Positions 1-64,000 of a stretch of 64,000 bases of DNA are shown here, one piece after another (within the stretch, counting starts at the first letter, position 1; each line of letters begins with the position of its first letter). The notes beneath the pieces were generated by a model. The model had not been told where the DNA came from. It searched no databases and saw only the letters and a program-made list of their open reading frames with translations. The position numbers and the translations under genes are program-made. Location: NCBI GenBank assembly GCA_053919585.1, contig CM132804.1. One strand, 5' to 3'. This DNA comes from Euprymna scolopes. Its lineage: Eukaryota.

Positions 1-1780
1 AGTTATCTTAATTGACTCACTCTCTTTGGGTTTTGGTTTCGAGTATTTTTTATTTACAATAAGTGGACTGTTTGGAAAAAAATCATAATACTCGCATGTA
101 TATGTATCAGTTGCTGTATGAATTAAGCTATAATATTTATGGATATTTTATGACCGGGCAACGATGAGAGGCCTGCTAGTTATATAGTAAAATTCACGCG
201 GAATAAGCAAAAAAAAAAAAAAAAAAGAAAAAAAAGAAAAGATAATGCCACTATCATAAATAACAAAATCCTATATTATAACTATATGTTTTAAATGAGA
301 AGGACATTTTTTTATAGAATCAAATTAGGTTAATTTGAATTTACGTACTTTTTGATTACAATTAATTTTTGTTGCTTATTGCTTTAGTTTTCGCTTTATC
401 AATTGTTAATATTACAAATGCACATTGGAAAAATAATGTCAAACTTGTTCTAATAGTAATACATATTGCGTAAGAACTTTCGAAATTGTTAAATTCACAC
501 TTTGCCAAAACTATTTTGTGAATTCTTTTACTACGTTCATGCCAATGCGAAATTCTGGCTATCTAAGCGTTCAGCATCATTGGTGTATGTACGATAACGT
601 TGAAAATCAGTCTACCACTTTTCAACGGATTTCCGATGGAGCACAGTCCAATTAATATTCATCAAACCATACCACTGCTTGACTGATATGTTTTTCAATC
701 AGAAAGCAATGTCTTATCACCACAAGTAATTCGGATGTTTAATTGATTTGAAACTTTAGAATAATAGCTTTACATTAATAATTATCATTTGGACACTAAT
801 AATCTTTTTGTTTTTTCTAAAATCTGACACGTACCATTTGAATGTCTTTATGTGAATCATATTACTGGTGAAATTTATGTGTTAGGCTCGAGTGATGTGT
901 TAATAATGATTTTACACGAATTATAAAGAAAAAAGATTTGCACGTCGGAATAGATTGTGATGTCATAATCTGATATCTCTGTACCTCACTCACTCACTCA
1001 CTCACTCACTCACTCACTCACTCACTCACTCACTCACTCTCTCTCTCATTACTTTCTATCTTATATTTTCAATCTTATCCGATATTTCGCCTCTGTATAC
1101 GATTTTATGTTATCTTTTAATTACTTTTATTATCGCATCTCTCACTATTTCTTTAGCTGCACCTTTACCAATATTTCAATCATAGTCATTTGTTTTTCTA
1201 GTTTTGAATATGAATATTACAAAACATCTGATATTTCCCAAAAACTCTGGTTGTGGTTCCGGAAAAGCCCATTTAAATATTTAAATGGGCTTTTCCGGAA
1301 CCACAACCAAGGTAAATGTTTCTCGCATGTTTTTCCCGTTAGGGATCCCCTCCCCCATCTTTTTTCTTTCTATTCAAAAAATACTACATTGCCAAAAGTG
1401 TATTTAATCATAAAGTCTGAAGAAATGCTGGTTTTTGAAAATTTTCAAACGATATAATGTTTGAAATTATCGAACTGGACACTGAAACAATTGTAACATA
1501 AAATGAAATATACTTTTCGTTGCCATCAACACCTTGTCTANNNNNNNNNNNNNNNNNNNNNNNNNNNNNNNNNNNNNNNNNNNNNNNNNNNNNNNNNNNN
1601 NNNNNNNNNNNNNNNNNNNNNNNNNNNNNNNNNNNNNNNNNNNNNNNNNNNNNNNNNNNNNNNNNNNNNNNNNNNNNNTATATATAATAAATTCCACAGC
1701 AATACAAAGTCGCAGTCTTAGAGTTCCGGTTCGTTGTCTGTTTGGCTTTTGGGGCTGCGACGTTGTTTGGCTGTGAAATT

Positions 1781-42530: not shown

Positions 42531-42603
42531 ATTGGTACCGTCGGTTTCAAGCCCGATAATAAGGCCCGTTTAAGGTATCCTTATCAAGCTCTCTTCAGCC
42601 AAT
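42531..42603 (-). ncRNA. Type I hammerhead ribozyme (mirror copy in the palindrome)
   Basis: Exact reverse complement of 42628-42700. Confidence 0.85.
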
Positions 42604-42627
42604 ATTCGTCTCGAATTCGAGACGAAT

Positions 42628-42700
42628 ATTGGCTGAAGAGAGCTTGATAAGGATACCTTAAACGGGCCTTATTATCGGGCTTGAAACCGACGGTACCAAT
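42628..42700 (+). ncRNA. Type I hammerhead ribozyme
   Basis: AUUGG-CUGAAGA-[GAGCUUGAUAA...UUAUCGGGCUU long stem II]-GAAA-CCGACGG-UA^-CCAAU; all core nucleotides present. Confidence 0.85.
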
Positions 42701-42811
42701 GACCTGTCTCAACTAACAACTTTCTGTACACAAAATATAAGTACGCTCTTAAAATTTGGATTTTCCTTTTAATTGAGCACTCTGCTGGAATTCTTTTTCC
42801 AAAAAAAACTA

Positions 42812-42901: not shown

Positions 42902-44948
42902 TCACGAATAGGCTCCTATATGGTTGACTATTTAACGAAATTGATTAATATAATGATAGAAGATGTATCGAGACACAAGAAATGGTATGTTTGATCTGGC
43001 AGAATGGTAATTCATAAAAATTATGGGGTCTGCGTTCGCGCCTGGCCCCCAAAGTATGGAAAAAATGAAGAAAAAAAAGCGTTTACAAGGAGGTTTGATA
43101 TAGATGTACATAAGAATACTTTGATAAGTATGTTTCAACTAAAATAGGGATGGTATAATTAAATCGTGGGGTCTGCGTTCGCGCCTGTTCTCCATGGAAA
43201 TATGGCACAAACTTTAACAAAGACTTTTCATATCTATCTGCATAAGTATACTTTGATAATTATGTTTCAGTTTGAAGAAATATGGTATAATAAAATTATA
43301 GGGTGTTCGTTCGCGCCTGACCTCCATAGAATGTAAATATGTCACAAAAGAAGATTTTTTAAAAGGTGTAAGGGTTCACAATAACACCTTAACTTTAATC
43401 TTAATTCACGTTAGCTTTTATTTAGTTTTTGAGTTAAATCATATTATGTCGAATAAATTCACTTCATAAATTCACGTTCTTATTAAAGTGAAACCCCCCA
43501 AAAAAAAAGAAAAACTCGGAACTTTAGACAATTCACGACACAAATTTTGCATAACTCTGTTTTTTTTCCTTCTCCACTTGCACGTGCCACTCTTTCGAAA
43601 ATAGATAAATAGATAAATAATAAAAATAAGAACTTTACTTGTTATCGTGTCAAAAGAAGGAAACAATCCTGCTCACGTGATTACGTGTCTTTTTAAAAAC
43701 ATTTACATAACCCTTTTATTTATATATCTGTCTAAGCATTTTTCGTCAGTGTACTAGACGGAATTCAGTTGATTACAAACCTTTCTGCGTGGTTTTTACA
43801 TTACAATAGTACAACCCTGATTCCGAAGCCGCAATACTACGACGTTCAATACTGTAAAACTGAAACGGAGCTATTCTTTGCTTTACAAAACTAAAGTAAT
43901 TGCGGGTTTTCTTTTTTAATATCCCATTTTGCTGTTTCGGATTATTTTACCAAAGTAAGTAAAGCTTCATTATTTTTCAAAACTGTTTTTGTTTCTTTGT
44001 TTTTCGATATTTCGTCGATATCATTTAGTAAGCGGGTTTAGCAGAAAAGCCAACAAACGACTACCCGAAAAATAAATATACAAGAAATAAATGTTACCAT
44101 AGTCAATAAGAGTTCAGTTAATGTTTTATTTTTGTTTTTAAATAGTTTTTAATACTTTTTACTTGAAATAATTTCAGCGAACCGAAATTAAAACGAAATT
44201 TGAGGCAATAACTACTTAAATGAATTTTTATATACGGGGTGGTCAAAAAGCCAGGTAACATTTTAAAGAAAAACGATATTAGCAATACACGTATATTTAA
44301 GTACCATACATTGAAATATAAAATGAAACAAACATGAAATATGTTTATTTTGTTAATTGTCGTCCATTTATCTCTATCAATCGCTGGAAGCGATTAACCA
44401 CTGATTGTGTAACACGTGTAATTATGTCAGCTGATATTCGCGCAATCTCCTCTTCAATAAATAACTTTAAAGACGCTATTGTATCAGGCTTCTTGCCATA
44501 AACGCTATCCTTTACATAGCCCCAAAGCCAGAAATCAGGAGGGGTAAGATCCGGAGATCTGGCTGGCCATTCAACTTATAATAAAATAATATTAAACGAA
44601 TAGAGATTATAATGGATCATATTGTTTTTTCTACCTTAAACATGTTACCTGACTTTTTGACCACCCTGTAGACTACACATGCCATAATCGAATATTCCTC
44701 AAGCACAAAATAACAGAAAACAATAAAATAGGTTTCCTTACGTTGAGGGAACTCTCTTAAATTGTTAACACAGAATGCTCAGGTGCTCCTCATTCAAATT
44801 GAAAACGGGGCTCTCTATTTTAAAGTCGCTGCCATTGTTATTTTTTTTTAAACGGTTCGTGAATTTTCACAAACTACTTAAAAATACAAACCAATGAACT
44901 TTTCTACCATAAAAGTAACTTTTATTGACTATGGTAACAGTTATTTCT

Positions 44949-45024
<76 letters not shown>

Positions 45025-45055
45025 AGAAATAACTGTTACCATAGTCAATAAAAGT

Positions 45056-45119
<64 letters not shown>

Positions 45120-58629: not shown

Positions 58630-59185
58630 TATTAATTTATTTATTATCTTATCTTTCTAAGTTGTTATTTCACGACGTTTCGGCCAACTATTCCCCTGGC
58701 CTTCGTCAAGTGGTAACTCCTAACTGCATTCTTAGCAATAACTGCCATCCATAGTTGTTGTCGTCTCACCACGTTTTTTTTTCTTTGGCCAATTAAGCTT
58801 CTGTCCGGCTTTGAAGCCGAAGAGATTCAACGTCTCTATCCACTGTGCCACGGGCCCCGAAGGGCGATCAAGGTTGGATATTTTTCGGTCTTATAAATCC
58901 ACGTTAATTTATTATCTGATCTTCCGGAGACTTACCTGGCCAAAAAAAAAAAAAAAAAAAAAACGTGGTGATACGACAACAACTATGGATGGCTGTAATT
59001 GCTGAGAATGCAGTTAGGAGATTCGGAGTTTCTATCCCGTCGCGGTTAGCACCTGGCGAAGGCTAGACGAATAGTGGACCGAAACGTCGTAAAACAGCAA
59101 CTAAGAAAGATAAGGATAATAGTCCGCAATAAATAAAGTAATAAATAATACTTATCTCAATAATGAATTCCAATTAAATAATACA
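58630..59185. mobile_element. PLE-derived insert: two inverted pLTR-like arms, each with an HHR motif, 12-bp TSD
   Basis: Arms ~58630-58795 and ~58935-59150; flanking direct repeat AATCAA(A/G)TTGTA at 58618-58629 and 59186-59197. Confidence 0.75.
58671..58712 (-). ncRNA. Minimal PLE-type hammerhead motif (C3 to U); partner on plus at 59050-59091 (A6 to G)
   Basis: CAC-UUGACGA-A-GGCCA...UGGCC-GAAA-CG-UC^-GUG. The two-copy consensus restores CUGACGA. Confidence 0.7.
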
Positions 59186-59799
59186 AATCAAGTTGTAGTC
59201 AGTTGGAAAGCAGGCAAAAGGAAGAGAGTTCAACAGGCGTGCAGTTCTAATAAAGAAGCTTTGTTCGCGGAATCTACGTTTATGTTTACGCACAGATAAA
59301 GAGTGGGGGGATTATTGATAGTGTTTTCAGCTAGACGAGTTTTTTGTGAAAGTTTGACGATGGGGGGGGGGCATAGATTGAAGGTCAGAACAGCGCGTGC
59401 CATGAAAATAATGATAAAGCAAAGACAGGTTCGCAACGTATCTTTTTTAAGAAAGAGGTTACAGGGAGGAGAAAAGGGCATCCCCACTAAGTTACGAAGT
59501 ATATTTTGAACTCTCTCAAGGCAGAATGAGCTGCTTCTAACAGCTCCTGCCCAAACATGGCAAAGGTACTCCGTCATTGGCCGCACCTGGCATTTATATA
59601 GGTACAGAACTAAAGCATGAGTGAAATATCTACTGGAGCGGTAGAAGGATCCCACCATTTTTCAGCGGCCTTGGAAACGTATGTTTGTAGCAACTTTTTA
59701 CATCGTGGAGCAAACATACATTCTTTGCAGCAACACTCAATATATTTGTTTCAATTCATGTTGCCCGTGAATGTTATAGCGAAGATATTTAACAAGAAG

Positions 59800-59873
<74 letters not shown>

Positions 59874-59968
59874 ATCAAATTTTAGTCATTCAATGAATTT
59901 AAATTTAAATCAATTTTGATCTGAAGCTCAAACATTTCACGTCATAAATTTTTAAATTCATTGAATGA

Positions 59969-60035
<67 letters not shown>

Positions 60036-60039
60036 TCTG

Positions 60040-60475
60040 TTTTTTTTATAAAAACGTTATTGTTTATATATGTGCATACATATTTCAGTGAGTTCCTATT
60101 TAAAGAGACCCACCTCATCAGACGGAAGAAGGAAACTTATTGAAACTAGAATCACAGTTCAATTCGTTTAAAAGAAATATCTCGGTGTGAATTATACTTT
60201 GAAAACAAAAGGGGGGTATAATTTATGAATATAGACAGTACAGGTTTCTGAACGGAGGTATGGAAAATAAACATAATAGCAGGGACTGGAAGAGGAGGGA
60301 TGTACGATTCGGCATGGGTATCACAGCCGGATATTTTTTTATAAACTAACTGAACTGTGATTCTCGTCTCAGTAAGTGTCCTTTTTGGTCTGACGAGGTG
60401 GGTCTCTATGAATAGGTACTTCACCGAAACATGTATGCACATATGTAACCAATAATGTTTGTATAATAAACAAAC
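60040..60475 (+). mobile_element. PLE 3' fragment with inverted pLTR (arms ~60042-60161 and 60351-60470)
   Basis: Inverted arms carry HHRs; the spacer encodes NLMNIDSTG..EVWK, resembling a GIY-YIG C-terminus. Confidence 0.65.
60385..60452 (+). ncRNA. Type I hammerhead ribozyme; degenerate inverted copy at ~60060-60126 (-)
   Basis: UUGGU-CUGACGA-GGUG...CACC-GAAA-CAUGUAUGCACAUAUG-UA^-ACCAA. Confidence 0.85.
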
Positions 60476-60664
60476 TATATATCTACCCTGTCCTCAATTG
60501 AGAACTTTTTAATAATCACGCGGGTTTTATTGGATTTACATCTGGGAAACCAATCTATACAACAATAACACACACACACACACACATATATATATGTGTA
60601 TATACATATATATATGCGTGCGTGTATGTATATTGCGTCCTAGTTTTAGTAGTTTCTTGTCTAG

Positions 60665-60708
60665 CCGCACTGATGAGCTGTGAAATAGCGAAACAGTACT
60701 GTATGTGG
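60665..60708 (+). ncRNA. Minimal type I hammerhead ribozyme in a ~90-bp insert ending at (TA)n
   Basis: CCGCA-CUGAUGA-GCUG ugaaa UAGC-GAAA-CAGUACUG-UA^-UGUGG; self-complementary ACAGUACUGU. Confidence 0.88.
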
Positions 60709-60710
60709 AT

Positions 60711-60762
<52 letters not shown>

Positions 60763-61097
60763 GCAAATATTATTAAATACAACGGAGACATTTTGTCTTA
60801 TAATTCTTTTTTTTAATTTTTCAATTTTTCGTATTGTCTTTTTTGTTTCAAAATCAAAAATATTAATAAAGGATCCATACATGTTGCTGTTACGAGCGCT
60901 TTCGATTCGTCCATGAATCATCATCAGGTGTTAAAAATACAGGATTGCGAAAATGAGGATTAAAAATGAAAACTAAAATATATATAGTCAGTGATGAGTT
61001 AAAATAAAAGTCGATTAAGAATAAAAGTCGATTAAAAATTCGAGTGTTAAAACCAGCAAGTTCGTAGACACCATGTACGAAGTCCGTCCAACACGGA

Positions 61098-61755
61098 CTA
61101 CGCAAGACATTTCAGAACGTTACTGCTTTTTTGAAATGCAATGTCATTTATATTAGGTTGAAGAGTTCTAATGTACGACGCTTCAAGAATCTTTAATTTT
61201 TTTACATTATTTTCCCGTTGTATAATTTTTGTGTTGTCAACGAGGACCTTTCTAACATTGGAGGGGGGACATCTATGTTCTTTTTTTAAATGTTTGTAAA
61301 TCGCGCTTGTGTCGTTAAGGTGCATAGTTATTCGCCGGGACAACGTTGTTGGTCTATGCCCAATATATGTATTATTTTTGGAGTTACATTCTCCAATAGA
61401 GCATTTAAATTTATACACTACATTGGTTTGTTCCAACGTTTTTATCGCCGGTGAAGAGTTGTTTTTAACCACAAGGTTTTGTGTTCGAAATTTCCTATAA
61501 TAGATAATAAATTTAATTTTAAAATTACTGTCAACAGCGTCAAGTATCTTCGTATAATATTTTTTATTGCATTTTCTTCGATTCTGAAATTAGGCGTCAT
61601 TTGATTTTGGTAAAATATATATTAATGGGGTTTGCATTGCGGTGTTGGCTTACGTTATTATTCTGGTTATCGGAAGATTGTAGCATTTTTTTTATTTGTT
61701 CATCAACAATGTAATTGGGGAAATGATTATTGATGAGTACTTGTTTAATGTTTTT
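61098..61755 (-). pseudogene. PLE RT-thumb/linker plus GIY-YIG endonuclease, 5'-truncated
   Basis: IKQVLINNHFPNYIVDEQI...VVYKFKC...C....TYIGH...LSRRITMH...IYKHL..EH...LKILEASYIRTLQPNIN. Confidence 0.88.
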
Positions 61756-61819
61756 TATTTTTAGTGGAGGATATCATTTTAGCGCGATTTAGTAAATTTT
61801 TTATTATTATTTTTTTTTA

Positions 61820-62087
61820 CATTGGGCATAGACCAACAACGTTGTCCCGGCGAATAACTATGCACCTTAACGACACAAGCGCGATTTACAAACATTTAAA
61901 AAAAGAACATAGATGTCCCCCCTCCAATGTTAGAAAGGTCCTCGTTGACAACACAAAAATTATACAACGGGAAAATAATGTAAAAAAATTAAAGATTCTT
62001 GAAGCGTCGTACATTAGAACTCTTCAACCTAATATAAATGACATTGCATTTCAAAAAAGCAGTAACGTTCTGAAATGTCTTGCGTAG
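61820..62087 (+). pseudogene. GIY-YIG C-terminal half (inverted duplicate)
   Basis: Translation identical to the minus copy from YIGH to the stop. Confidence 0.88.
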
Positions 62088-62249
62088 TCCGTGTTGGACG
62101 GACTTCGTACATGGTGTCTACGAACTTGCTGGTTTTAACACTCGAATTTTTAATCGACTTTTATTCTTAATCGACTTTTATTTTAACTCATCACTTACTA
62201 TATATATTTTAGTTTTCATTTTTAATCCTCATTTTCGCAATCCTGTATT

Positions 62250-62296
62250 TTTATCATCTGATGATGATTCATGGACGAATCGAAAGCGCTCGTAAC
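62250..62296 (+). ncRNA. Minimal PLE-type hammerhead motif; mirror copy 60890-60934 (-)
   Basis: CUGAUGA-U-GAUUC auggac GAAUC-GAAA-GCGC-UC^; palindromic AGCGCU; stem I weak. Confidence 0.7.
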
Positions 62297-62443
62297 AGCA
62301 ATATGTATGGATCCTTTATTAATATTTTTGATTTTGAAACAAAAAAGACAATACGAAAAATTGAAAAAAAAAAAAAAAAGAATTATAAGACAAAATGTCT
62401 CCGTTGTATTTAATAATATTTGCTTGAATGAAAAAATGCTGCC

Positions 62444-62493
<50 letters not shown>

Positions 62494-62498
<5 letters not shown>

Positions 62499-62557
62499 AT
62501 TTATAAAATATATATGGCGATTAAGCTTAATCGCCATATATATTTTATAAATTACTA
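62494..62557. repeat. Perfect 64-bp spacerless palindrome
   Basis: TAGTAATTTATAAAATATATATGGCGATTAAG|CTTAATCGCCATATATATTTTATAAATTACTA; left arm identical to 62717-62750. Confidence 0.95.
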
Positions 62558-62659
62558 ACTAGCTCTACCTACGTATTGAGCACTTTTGAAGTAAATACTT
62601 AAAGTTTATGCATAAATCTATACTTTCGTATATTAAATTTGTGTGAGTAAATGAAGTAG

Positions 62660-62721
<62 letters not shown>

Positions 62722-62744
62722 ATTTATAAAATATATATGGCGAT

Positions 62745-62797
62745 TAAGCTACACTGAATATTCTGCGTTTCATCCACTCTAGGATTCGTCAGGCTTA
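62745..62797 (-). ncRNA. Type I hammerhead ribozyme
   Basis: UAAGC-CUGACGA-AUCC uagagu GGAU-GAAA-CGCAGAAUAUUCAGUG-UA^-GCUUA. Confidence 0.85.
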
Positions 62798-62825
62798 TGC
62801 GCGAATACTGTAGTTGCTTCTTGTT

Positions 62826-62901
62826 TTTATATATGTTGAGGATTTTTAGTTAGCCAATCAGCTTTCTAGTATCCACTGCGTCCCTTCCTATCAGCCAATG
62901 G
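62826..62901 (-). promoter_or_regulatory. Putative Pol II promoter: two NF-Y-type CCAAT boxes and TATA upstream of the HHR
   Basis: AGCCAATCAG (62852-62861), AGCCAATGGG (62893-62902); TATATAAA on minus at 62833-62826, ~30 nt before HHR stem I. Confidence 0.45.
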
Positions 62902-62982
62902 GGATTGCATTTTATCGAACAAAGCATCTGTTTTAGAACTAGGTTAGTGGTTTGAGGTAGACGTAAATCCAATATATATATA

Positions 62983-63420
62983 TTAGGTTGGGAGGATTAA
63001 TCGGAATCGGAATCAGGAATCGGAAAAAATCTGAGCTTTTTGGGGTATCGGAATCGGTATCGAAATCGGAAAAAATTGCGTCTATTTTCCGATGCCAAAA
63101 CCGATTCCCTTAATTATCTTCTTTATTTGATTTTGGTTTAAGAAACATCTTCCACTGCTTGTAATAATAATAAAATAATAAATATTTTTTGATTTAAATT
63201 TCCAGTAAAACTAAAATCTCTTGTTCACTCCCTCATAAGTGTGTTCTTACGTCTGAGGAAATATATGCACATTTAACACGTGTTTTTAAAGTAATCGTGG
63301 CAAAATAACACTTTTATAGTTAAATATTTAGAGATTCATAAAGAATCAGAATCGGAATCGGTAATTGTATCGGAATCGGGAGTTTACTAGAGTATCGGTA
63401 ATTGTATCGGAAACGAGAAA
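62983..63420. mobile_element. Probable hAT-type non-autonomous element end with (AATCGG)n subterminal repeats
   Basis: TAGGTTGGG start followed by clustered AATCGG/TATCGG hexamers; runs into an N gap. Confidence 0.45.
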
Positions 63421-64000
63421 NNNNNNNNNNNNNNNNNNNNNNNNNNNNNNNNNNNNNNNNNNNNNNNNNNNNNNNNNNNNNNNNNNNNNNNNNNNNNNNN
63501 NNNNNNNNNNNNNNNNNNNNNNNNNNNNNNNNNNNNNNNNNNNNNNNNNNNNNNNNNNNNNNNNNNNNNNNNNGGGAGAGAAAGAGAGGAAAAGAAACGA
63601 TCAATGTGCATAGCAGGATCAGACAGAATATATGGCTATGGCCCCCATCCATGTGCTACTCTATACCTGTATAATGCATTTGAGCTGGGCGTCTCACAAC
63701 CGAATGAGCTTCGTTACCTTCACGACGGCGGCAACGTAAAATGAGTTGCTCACACATTGTGCACAACTTTTGACACACCGTAGTGTAAGATTATTTCTTA
63801 CATAAACAAACACGCACAGAACATGTTAATGGCCGCCTCTTCGTGTTACTTCCACTCCGCTTCTTCAACATGTTTCGGAGGGAAGGTGATATTTCGCTAC
63901 ATACTGATAAGGGGAAAATGCTATATCGGATGTATTCTGGATAGACGTTTTACGCCAGAAACTATTTTGAGCCGGCCTTATCAATCCGGCTGATTATTGT

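What the first reader, a model, noticed from the sequence alone, without database searches (positions are those of the whole stretch)
62494..62797. Palindrome that folds back exactly at a hammerhead self-cleavage site
Seen: the minus-strand HHR at 62745-62797 is predicted to cut GUA^GCUUAAUCGCCAUAUAUAUUUUAUAAAUUACU, and that 3' product runs into (TA)n. About 220 bp away is a perfect 64-bp palindrome made only of this 3' product and its reverse complement, with the axis (AAG|CTT) at the first two bases after the cleavage site. Known: PLE pLTRs and retrozymes carry type I HHRs, and PLE insertions often have inverted 5' segments. Inference: RT primed in (TA)n copied a self-cleaved RNA to its ribozyme-defined 5' end, then snapped back or re-primed to copy the opposite strand. 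That would be a DNA fossil of in vivo cleavage and would tie the ribozyme to second-strand or hairpin formation.
Basis: partly seen in the sequence, partly recalled or inferred. Interest (0 to 1): 0.85.

Follow-up and report, generated by a model that had tools for sequence, protein, structure and literature searches.

The report
Ribozyme-tail palindrome in a (TA)n microsatellite
A perfect 64-bp palindrome sits beside a small hammerhead-ribozyme retroelement of Penelope type and consists of two head-to-head copies of the 31 bases that follow the ribozyme's predicted cut, so it may record that a self-cut RNA was reverse-transcribed; one locus cannot rule out coincidence.

Summary
Positions 62494-62557 are a perfect, spacerless 64-bp palindrome. 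Each arm is the 31-nt stretch that, in the neighbouring element Y (62719-62972, minus strand), runs from the predicted cut of a canonical type I hammerhead (GUA^G, +1 = 62749) to the element's 3' end at (TA)n. The two arms overlap by the self-complementary GC that begins the 3' cleavage product.

The locus is a (TA)n tract hit several times by Penelope-type insertions, including a young head-to-head pair of GIY-YIG-encoding copies.

Best reading (about 0.5): a Penelope-type insertion primed on both target strands. Both cDNAs ran off at the ribozyme-made 5' end and annealed through GC. A true single-strand snap-back is sterically unlikely.

Main rival (about 0.3): the same kind of insertion, with the junction at AGCT/GC by chance (1/74 to 1/23 for this sequence).

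Assembly artefact and DNA-level fold-back are unlikely, because the flanks are not mirrored.

No further copy of Y could be obtained, so no breakpoint statistics exist. First-stage notes of this scan list at least eight similar coincidences elsewhere in this genome. They are unverified and have no denominator.

The element kind and its junction palindromes are known. The link to the hammerhead cut was not found in the papers read here.

The parts
62494..62557 (.). Perfect spacerless 64-bp palindrome (axis 62525|62526)
   Evidence: one of only four perfect palindromes with arms of 14 nt or more and at least 3 G/C in 64 kb
62496..62526 (-). Left arm: 31-nt copy of the Y tail (hammerhead 3' product up to the element's 3' end), RNA sense on the minus strand, 3' end facing (TA)24
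   Evidence: 100% identical to 62717-62750
62525..62555 (+). Right arm: the same 31 nt in plus sense, 3' end facing TA plus single-copy DNA; overlaps the left arm by GC (62525-62526)
62446..62495 (.). (TA)24 microsatellite: target, and probably the primer, on the left side
62558..62659 (.). Single-copy spacer. It is not a mirror image of the left flank, which argues against a fold-back artefact
   Evidence: only a self hit in the window
62660..62718 (.). (TA)29 microsatellite next to the 3' end of element Y
62719..62749 (-). Tail of element Y: the 31 nt from the predicted cleavage site (+1 = 62749) to the 3' terminus ...AAAUUAC
62739..62802 (-). Type I hammerhead ribozyme motif of Y (helix I 62793-62802 with 62739-62749; CUGACGA 62786-62792; cut between 62750 and 62749)
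62719..62972 (-). Element Y: 254-nt non-coding hammerhead element with (TA)n on both sides, resembling a solo Penelope pseudo-LTR. It has two ATTGG (CCAAT-type) boxes and TATATAAAAA 32-41 nt upstream of the ribozyme core
   Evidence: promoter motifs read from the sequence only
60758..61367 (-). Penelope-like element Z, minus arm of a head-to-head pair (GIY-YIG ORF 61098-61472; the arm probably runs on towards 61817)
61818..62445 (+). Penelope-like element Z, plus arm. It is 98.7% identical to the minus arm over 611 nt, is 5'-truncated, and its 3' end abuts (TA)24
60654..60713 (+). Second hammerhead fragment (family L). Its 10-nt tail UGUGGAUUAC runs into (TA)22, at the left edge of the same original microsatellite
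   Evidence: weak RF00008 hit, 21.6 bits
42498..42733 (.). Comparison case: a 236-bp perfect palindrome of another hammerhead family. Its axis lies 17 nt upstream of the ribozyme core, not at the cut

Best explanation
The palindrome is a miniature Penelope-type retro-insertion made from hammerhead-cleaved RNA.

Element Y is a solo pseudo-LTR-like unit: promoter-like motifs, a type I hammerhead, a 31-nt tail, then (TA)n. A transcript through Y is cut by the ribozyme. The 3' product begins GCUUAAUCGCC... and carries the element's normal reverse-transcription start (...AAAUUAC/(UA)n).

A Penelope RT-endonuclease supplied in trans cut both strands at the edge of a nearby (TA)n tract. Each 3'-OH primed reverse transcription on a copy of that 3' product. 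Both cDNAs ran off at the ribozyme-made 5' end (...GATTAAGC-3'). Their self-complementary terminal GC annealed, and each cDNA was extended on the other. The result is exactly GGCGATTAAGCTTAATCGCC.

Shown: the sequence anatomy, the ribozyme motif, and the Penelope-type context.
Inferred: cleavage in vivo, priming on both strands, run-off, and joining by GC.
For: (1) Three boundaries coincide with functional landmarks of Y. Both outer arm ends equal Y's 3' terminus next to TA. The inner ends equal the predicted cut, with a 2-nt GC overlap.

(2) The hammerhead has a complete catalytic core and folds as a three-way junction at the MFE. Motifs of this stringency occur 5 times in the window and 0 times in 200 shuffles.

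(3) The same microsatellite carries other Penelope-type insertions: a 98.7%-identical head-to-head pair with a GIY-YIG domain above Pfam's cut-off, and another hammerhead fragment ending ...AUUAC(UA)n.

(4) The literature supports each step. Inverted 5'-truncated copies, junction palindromes and AT-rich/(TA)n targets are PLE hallmarks (PMC3846280, PMC8557442). A purified PLE protein cleaves and extends both DNA strands. It still uses RNA truncated to +20, next to the hammerhead cut at +26. Its hammerhead is protein-assisted (PMC11167929). Mollusc type I hammerhead elements self-cleave in vivo (PMC7229834).

(5) Helix III alone is only -2.0 kcal/mol, so a structural RT stop at that spot is unlikely. 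The dimer fold (-37.6 against 2 x -13.1 kcal/mol) would bring two templates together.

(6) The flanks are not mirrored, which a fold-back artefact or a DNA-level inverted duplication would require.
Against: - This is a single locus, selected because of the coincidence.
- A microhomology-driven junction anywhere in Y would hit this site with probability 1/74 (2-nt sites) to 1/23 (4-nt sites). The genome holds very many such elements.
- AGCT pre-exists at the cut, so a cDNA that read one base past the site on uncleaved RNA gives the same sequence.
- Of four head-to-head structures in the window, only this one breaks at a cut.
- The hammerhead has A10.1-U11.1, a 4-bp helix II and an A.A mismatch in helix III. 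It has no Rfam hit and its fold z-score is only -0.67.
- Frangieh et al. found cleavage unnecessary in vitro and saw no RNA-seq ends at the cut (PMC11167929).
- No second copy of Y was available.
Confidence: 0.5

Rival explanations
1. Same kind of event, a Penelope-type head-to-head insertion of two very short 5'-truncated copies, but made on uncleaved RNA. The two cDNAs stopped early and annealed at the pre-existing self-complementary AGCT/GC, which happens to lie at the cleavage site. Alternatively the RT paused at the base of helix III.
For: Junction palindromes at arbitrary positions are known for PLEs (PMC3846280). The 236-bp palindrome at 42498-42733 has its axis at GAATTC, 17 nt upstream of the core and not at a cut. 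Y has 74 two-nt and 23 four-nt self-complementary sites. The observed junction is also compatible with a cDNA ending one base past the cut. The locus was selected after the fact from many windows.
Against: It needs both cDNAs to stop within one or two bases of the same landmark. Helix III is weak (-2.0 kcal/mol), and helix I would already be unwound when the RT arrives there. The per-junction chance is only about 1-4%.
Confidence: 0.3
2. DNA-level rearrangement. Replication template switching or hairpin-capped break repair in the unstable (TA)n region produced an inverted duplication of the end of a Y copy, with no RNA step.
For: (TA)n tracts are very dense here: 27 tracts of at least 8 units in 64 kb. 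Such tracts are prone to secondary structure. The 4-nt AGCT could seed a switch.
Against: The duplicated segment would have to start exactly at the tail/(TA)n boundary and turn exactly at the cut. The right arm is followed by one TA and then single-copy DNA, not by a mirrored (TA)n and flank. Fold-back repair normally yields long inverted duplications.
Confidence: 0.08
3. Assembly or library artefact: a fold-back chimera at the self-complementary AGCT.
For: The scaffold has N gaps nearby (63421-63575). Palindromes and (TA)n tracts are hard to assemble, and PLE structures are known to trouble assemblers (PMC8557442).
Against: A fold-back read mirrors everything beyond the turn, but here only 32 nt are mirrored and the two flanks differ. 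No palindromic k-mer long enough to mislead a graph assembler exists in parent Y, only AGCT. The same window holds other Penelope-type inverted structures, of a kind reported for PLEs (PMC3846280, PMC8557442).
Confidence: 0.07

Closest known systems
Penelope-like elements: pseudo-LTRs with hammerheads, and inverted 5'-truncated copies with palindromes at the inverted junction (Arkhipova et al. 2013, PMC3846280; Cervera and de la Pena 2014, PMC4209133; Craig et al. 2021, PMC8557442)
   Same: Hammerhead close to the 3' end of the inserted unit. Head-to-head arrangement with 3' ends outward. AT-rich/(TA)n target. Palindromic junction. A GIY-YIG-encoding partner lies in the same tract.
   Different: Here the inserted unit is only the 31 nt downstream of the ribozyme cut, and the junction coincides with that cut. 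The papers read here do not relate junction palindromes to the hammerhead site. Arkhipova et al. explained them by self-priming, possibly on antisense RNA.
In vitro Penelope retrotransposition (Poseidon of Anolis; Frangieh et al. 2024, PMC11167929)
   Same: Cleavage and extension of both target strands. A defined internal start of reverse transcription downstream of the hammerhead. A template truncated to about the cut remains active. The hammerhead is protein-assisted.
   Different: That study found cleavage dispensable and detected no RNA ends at the cut. The present locus would be evidence that cleaved RNA is used in vivo, in a mollusc family with a canonical rather than minimal hammerhead.
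Metazoan non-LTR retrozymes (Cervera and de la Pena 2020, PMC7229834; Li et al. 2026 preprint, 10.64898/2026.07.22.740005)
   Same: Small non-coding AT-rich elements with type I hammerheads. They are abundant in molluscs, self-cleave in vivo, and are proposed to be non-autonomous PLE derivatives.
   Different: Retrozymes are defined by tandem units that give circular RNAs. Y is a single unit, and nothing here shows a circle.
R2 non-LTR retrotransposon with an HDV-like ribozyme at its 5' end (Eickbush et al. 2013, PMC3774820)
   Same: A self-cleaving ribozyme sets the 5' end of the RNA template, and so the 5' junction of new insertions.
   Different: A different ribozyme class and a different retroelement class. 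R2 makes no head-to-head dimers, and its ribozyme lies at the element's 5' end rather than near the 3' end.

Membership tests
Type I hammerhead ribozyme | Conserved core CUGANGA ... GAAA ... UH with the A15.1-U16.1 pair | tested here: met
   CUGACGA, GAAA and GUA^G are all present. Motifs of this stringency: 5 in the window, 0 in 200 shuffles.
Type I hammerhead ribozyme | Three helices around the core, with helix I open and helices II and III capped | tested here: met
   The MFE and centroid structures of 62735-62805(-) give exactly this junction, -14.2 kcal/mol.
Type I hammerhead ribozyme | Match to the curated covariance models (Rfam hammerhead clan) | tested here: inconclusive
   No hit even at E<=10 on 83 nt. 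The other canonical hammerheads of the window are missed too, except for a weak RF00008 hit at 60654-60699.
Type I hammerhead ribozyme | Usual G10.1-C11.1 closing pair of helix II | tested here: not met
   Y has A10.1-U11.1. The other three families in the window have G10.1. This may lower activity but does not exclude it.
Type I hammerhead ribozyme | Self-cleavage at the predicted bond | not testable with these tools
   Needs a transcription/cleavage assay and mapping of 5'-OH ends.
Penelope-like element (insertion signature / solo pseudo-LTR) | RT plus GIY-YIG endonuclease ORF | tested here: not met
   Y and the palindrome are non-coding. Only the neighbouring element Z encodes a GIY-YIG domain (PF01541, 24 bits against a cut-off of 22.6; 932 homologues). 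Y can at most be a non-autonomous or solo-pLTR derivative.
Penelope-like element (insertion signature / solo pseudo-LTR) | Head-to-head inverted 5'-truncated copies, 3' ends outward, often with a junction palindrome | tested here: met
   The palindrome arms are oriented this way. The same architecture is seen for Z, for family B and for the 236-bp palindrome.
Penelope-like element (insertion signature / solo pseudo-LTR) | AT-rich or microsatellite target | tested here: met
   All hammerhead units in the window abut (TA)n or TA-rich DNA.
Non-LTR retrozyme | Tandem repeats of hammerhead units that yield a cleavage-to-cleavage monomer | tested here: not met
   There is only one Y unit and one Y hammerhead in the window.

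The most novel reading that the evidence does not exclude
Hammerhead cleavage is an integral step of Penelope-type integration, not a side reaction. The palindromic loop of helix III lets two RNAs form a dimeric ribozyme inside a dimeric RT-endonuclease particle, and both RNAs are cut. The two 3' products are reverse-transcribed from the two nicked target strands. The run-off cDNAs then anneal end to end and serve as each other's second-strand template. On this view, perfect head-to-head palindromes mark defined RNA 5' ends. The end is the ribozyme cut here, and possibly the transcription start in the 236-bp palindrome at 42498-42733, whose arms begin 17 nt upstream of the core, where related units carry TATA/Inr-like motifs.
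Probability: 0.2. Interest if true: 0.8.

Novelty: new variant of a known kind. Interest (0 to 1): 0.5.

Why it matters
The papers read here leave two questions open. One is what the hammerheads of Penelope-like elements and animal retrozymes do in the transposition cycle. The other is how the odd inverted and tandem insertion structures arise.

The only in vitro system found cleavage dispensable and saw no cleaved RNA ends. If junctions and 5' ends pile up at hammerhead cuts, that would be genomic evidence that cleaved RNA is a real template in vivo. It would also support integration primed on both strands, with the two cDNAs annealing to each other.

The test is cheap: a breakpoint histogram over a genome rich in these elements. 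If there is no pile-up, this locus is an ordinary short Penelope-type insertion.

Tried and rejected
- Rfam at gathering and at permissive thresholds gave no hammerhead hit for Y. The only hits on the palindrome were generic hairpin (miRNA-model) matches, which reflect the hairpin shape alone.
- More Y copies were sought. BLAST within the window found none. An exact-pattern scan of metagenome contigs gave three chance hits with no hammerhead upstream.
- The protein route was tried: homologues of the GIY-YIG ORF, then their contigs. It returned contigs of only 1.4-3 kb, or no DNA at all, so it was useless for breakpoint statistics.
- I considered that the arms are TIRs of a MITE-like DNA transposon with a TA duplication. 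This was rejected. Y has no matching inverted end at 62972, and the first 10 nt of the tail form helix I of the ribozyme.
- A second candidate pair of 'equal inverted tails', at 44914-45059, turned out to be the TIR of an 870-bp DNA transposon and is unrelated.
- No tRNA-like head was found in 59000-64000.
- The central AAGCTT/GAATTC restriction sites were considered as ligation artefacts. This was rejected for this locus because parent Y reads TAGCTT at that place and the flanks are not mirrored.

Full report
**Observation**

The sequence and a scan for perfect inverted repeats show a spacerless 64-bp palindrome at 62494-62557, with its axis between 62525 and 62526 (AAG|CTT). Its 30-nt arm core, CTTAATCGCCATATATATTTTATAAATTAC, occurs exactly three times in the window: 62496-62525 (-), 62526-62555 (+) and 62719-62748 (-). 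None is expected by chance. Only four perfect palindromes of comparable quality exist in the 64 kb.

The third copy is contiguous with a hammerhead motif on the minus strand:
- helix I strands GCGCAUAAGC and GCUUAAUCGC, with a small internal loop;
- CUGACGA;
- a 4-bp helix II;
- GAAA;
- helix III with the self-complementary loop GAAUAUUC;
- GUA^G.

The unconstrained MFE fold of 62735-62805(-) is exactly this three-way junction. A strict descriptor finds five such motifs in the window and none in 200 dinucleotide-preserving shuffles. The first base of the 3' product is 62749. The product runs 31 nt to ...AAAUUAC and then into (TA)29.

Rfam gives no hammerhead hit. It also misses the other canonical hammerheads of this window, apart from one weak RF00008 match, so this says little. 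Features that might lower activity are an A10.1-U11.1 pair, a short helix II and an A.A mismatch in helix III.

**Geometry of the junction**

Written as run-off products, the left arm is 62496-62526 (...GATTAAGC) and the right arm is 62555-62525 read on the other strand. They overlap by the self-complementary GC that forms bases +1 and +2 of the cleavage product. The observed GGCGATTAAGCTTAATCGCC is therefore what two cDNAs ending at the cut would give if they annealed by their last two bases and were extended on each other.

The same sequence also arises from:
- blunt joining of cDNAs one base short of the end;
- a 4-nt AGCT overlap of cDNAs that read one base beyond the cut on uncleaved RNA.

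Outward, both arms end at the same base as element Y does, followed by TA. On the left this is (TA)24. On the right it is a single TA and then 102 bp that are single-copy in the window.

**Context**

Y (62719-62972, minus strand, 254 nt) is non-coding and has (TA)n on both sides. There is no other copy of it in the window. Upstream of its ribozyme it has two ATTGG boxes and TATATAAAAA at -41 to -32 from the core. This makes it look like a solo Penelope pseudo-LTR, although these promoter motifs are only read from the sequence.

To the left, the same original microsatellite carries two further insertions:
- A head-to-head pair of 5'-truncated copies of a Penelope-like element, Z. Homology runs 60758-61367 against 62428-61818 at 98.7% identity. 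The ORF end matches the GIY-YIG domain above Pfam's cut-off and has 932 homologues in the representative library.
- Another hammerhead fragment whose 10-nt tail, UGUGGAUUAC, runs into (TA)22.

The window has 27 (TA)n tracts of eight or more units. Two more head-to-head hammerhead structures are present:
- A diverged pair with unequal arms at 60042-60190 and 60321-60470.
- A perfect 236-bp palindrome at 42498-42733, whose arms contain the whole ribozyme and begin 17 nt upstream of its core.

So the palindrome under study is one of four Penelope-type inverted structures in the window, and the only one that turns at a ribozyme cut.

**What is known**

- Inverted 5'-truncated copies, AT-rich or (TA)n targets, short optional 'tails' and palindromes at the inverted junction are described features of Penelope-like elements (PMC3846280, PMC8557442). 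So are hammerheads in their pseudo-LTRs (PMC4209133).
- Animal type I hammerhead repeats (retrozymes) self-cleave. In a mussel they accumulate as circular RNAs (PMC7229834). A 2026 preprint argues that they are non-autonomous derivatives of Penelope-like elements (10.64898/2026.07.22.740005).
- In the only in vitro system (PMC11167929), the protein cuts and extends both DNA strands. Reverse transcription starts at defined internal sites downstream of the hammerhead. An RNA truncated to +20, with the cut at +26, is still an active template, and the hammerhead needs the protein to cleave. However, cleavage was dispensable there, and no RNA-seq reads ended at the cut.
- For R2, an HDV-like ribozyme is known to set the template's 5' end and thereby the 5' junction (PMC3774820).
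- None of the papers I could read connects Penelope junction palindromes with the hammerhead site.

**Most likely mechanism (confidence about 0.5)**

1. A transcript through Y is cut by its hammerhead.
2. The 3' product keeps the normal start site for reverse transcription at ...AAAUUAC/(UA)n.
3. A Penelope enzyme acting in trans nicks both strands at the edge of a (TA)n tract about 100 bp away.
4. Each 3'-OH primes on one copy of the product.
5. Both cDNAs run off at the cut, anneal by GC, and complete each other.

This accounts for three boundaries at once, for the 3'-ends-outward orientation, and for the loop-less centre.

Helix III alone is worth only -2.0 kcal/mol, so a structural stop for the RT at that base is unlikely. 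A dimer of two ribozymes is predicted to be about 11 kcal/mol better than two monomers. That is the known behaviour of Penelope-type and amphibian hammerheads, and it would place two templates in one particle.

What is shown: the anatomy and the context. What is inferred: cleavage in vivo, priming on both strands, run-off, and the GC joint.

**Why confidence is not higher**

- The locus was chosen because of the coincidence.
- If the joint could form at any self-complementary site of Y, the chance of this one is 1/74 (2-nt sites) to 1/23 (4-nt sites). The genome evidently contains very many such insertions.
- AGCT pre-exists at the cut.
- Two other head-to-head structures in the window pass through an uncut ribozyme.
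- I could not obtain a second copy of Y. There is none in the window, only chance hits in metagenome contigs, and only short contigs by the protein route.

First-stage notes of this scan list at least eight further loci in the same genome where an inversion junction or an element boundary is said to sit at a hammerhead cut. One follow-up states that other copies record in vivo cleavage. These are unverified notes without a denominator. I count them as leads, not support.

**Rivals**

- Chance, or microhomology on uncleaved RNA: about 0.3.
- A DNA-level inverted duplication: about 0.08.
- An assembly artefact: about 0.07.

The last two both predict mirrored flanks, which are absent: (TA)24 plus element Z on the left, against one TA plus single-copy DNA on the right.

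A MITE reading was rejected. Y has no matching inverted end, and the first ten bases of the tail are helix I of the ribozyme.

**A wider reading that the data allow**

Perfect palindromes may mark defined RNA 5' ends.
- The arms of the 236-bp palindrome start 17 nt upstream of the core.
- In family B, a TATAAA lies exactly 31 nt upstream of a TCAGT whose A is 19 nt from the core.
- In Y, a CAGT has its A at -17, downstream of a TATA-like box.

That palindrome could therefore reflect run-off at a transcription start, and the present one run-off at the ribozyme cut. This rests on motif resemblance only.

**Verdict**

The object is a new variant of a known kind: a Penelope-type inverted insertion reduced to the ribozyme's 3' product. 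Its value lies in the cheap genome-wide test it suggests for the role of hammerheads in Penelope-type integration.

Noticed in passing
window 42498-42733: Perfect 236-bp palindrome with a complete type I hammerhead on each arm (cuts at 42535/42536 on the minus strand and 42695/42696 on the plus strand). There is (TA)28 on the left only. The axis is at GAA|TTC, 17 nt upstream of the ribozyme core, which is the distance at which related units carry Inr-like motifs. It might mark a transcription start.
   Followed up: partly
window 62258-62292 and 60886-60920: Element Z carries a minimal Penelope-type hammerhead: CUGAUGA plus an extra U, helix II GAUUC/GAAUC, then GAAA-GCGC-UC^G. A 53%-identical relative from a marine metagenome (L004, about 845-885) has the same extra U, with helix II changed on both sides (GUUCA/UGAAC).
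   Followed up: partly
window 60321-60470 and 60042-60190: Diverged (83%) head-to-head pair of a third hammerhead family. The plus arm has TATAAA exactly 31 nt upstream of a TCAGT initiator-like motif, which itself lies 19 nt upstream of the ribozyme core. The ribozyme would then sit at the very 5' end of the transcript.
   Followed up: partly
window 44081-44950, 45023-45058, 23717-24022: An 870-bp element with 34-37-bp terminal inverted repeats (CAAGAAATAACTGTTACC...) inserted in TA-rich DNA. There is a solo 36-bp end across a (TA)36 tract and an 82%-identical second copy. It looks like a Tc1/mariner-type non-autonomous DNA transposon and is unrelated to the hammerheads.
   Followed up: partly
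window 1248-1309: Another perfect spacerless 62-bp palindrome (TGGTTGTGGTTCCGGAAAAGCCCATTTAAAT and its complement). It is not next to (TA)n and has no hammerhead nearby. Origin unknown.
   Followed up: no
window 59872-59971: A 100-bp segment between two long (TA)n tracts with 22-bp inverted ends (TTAGTCATTCAATGAATTTAAA). It may be a MITE or another small inverted insertion.
   Followed up: no
whole window: Very high density of (TA)n microsatellites: 27 tracts of 8 or more units in 64 kb. Many of them are bordered by mobile-element ends.
   Followed up: partly
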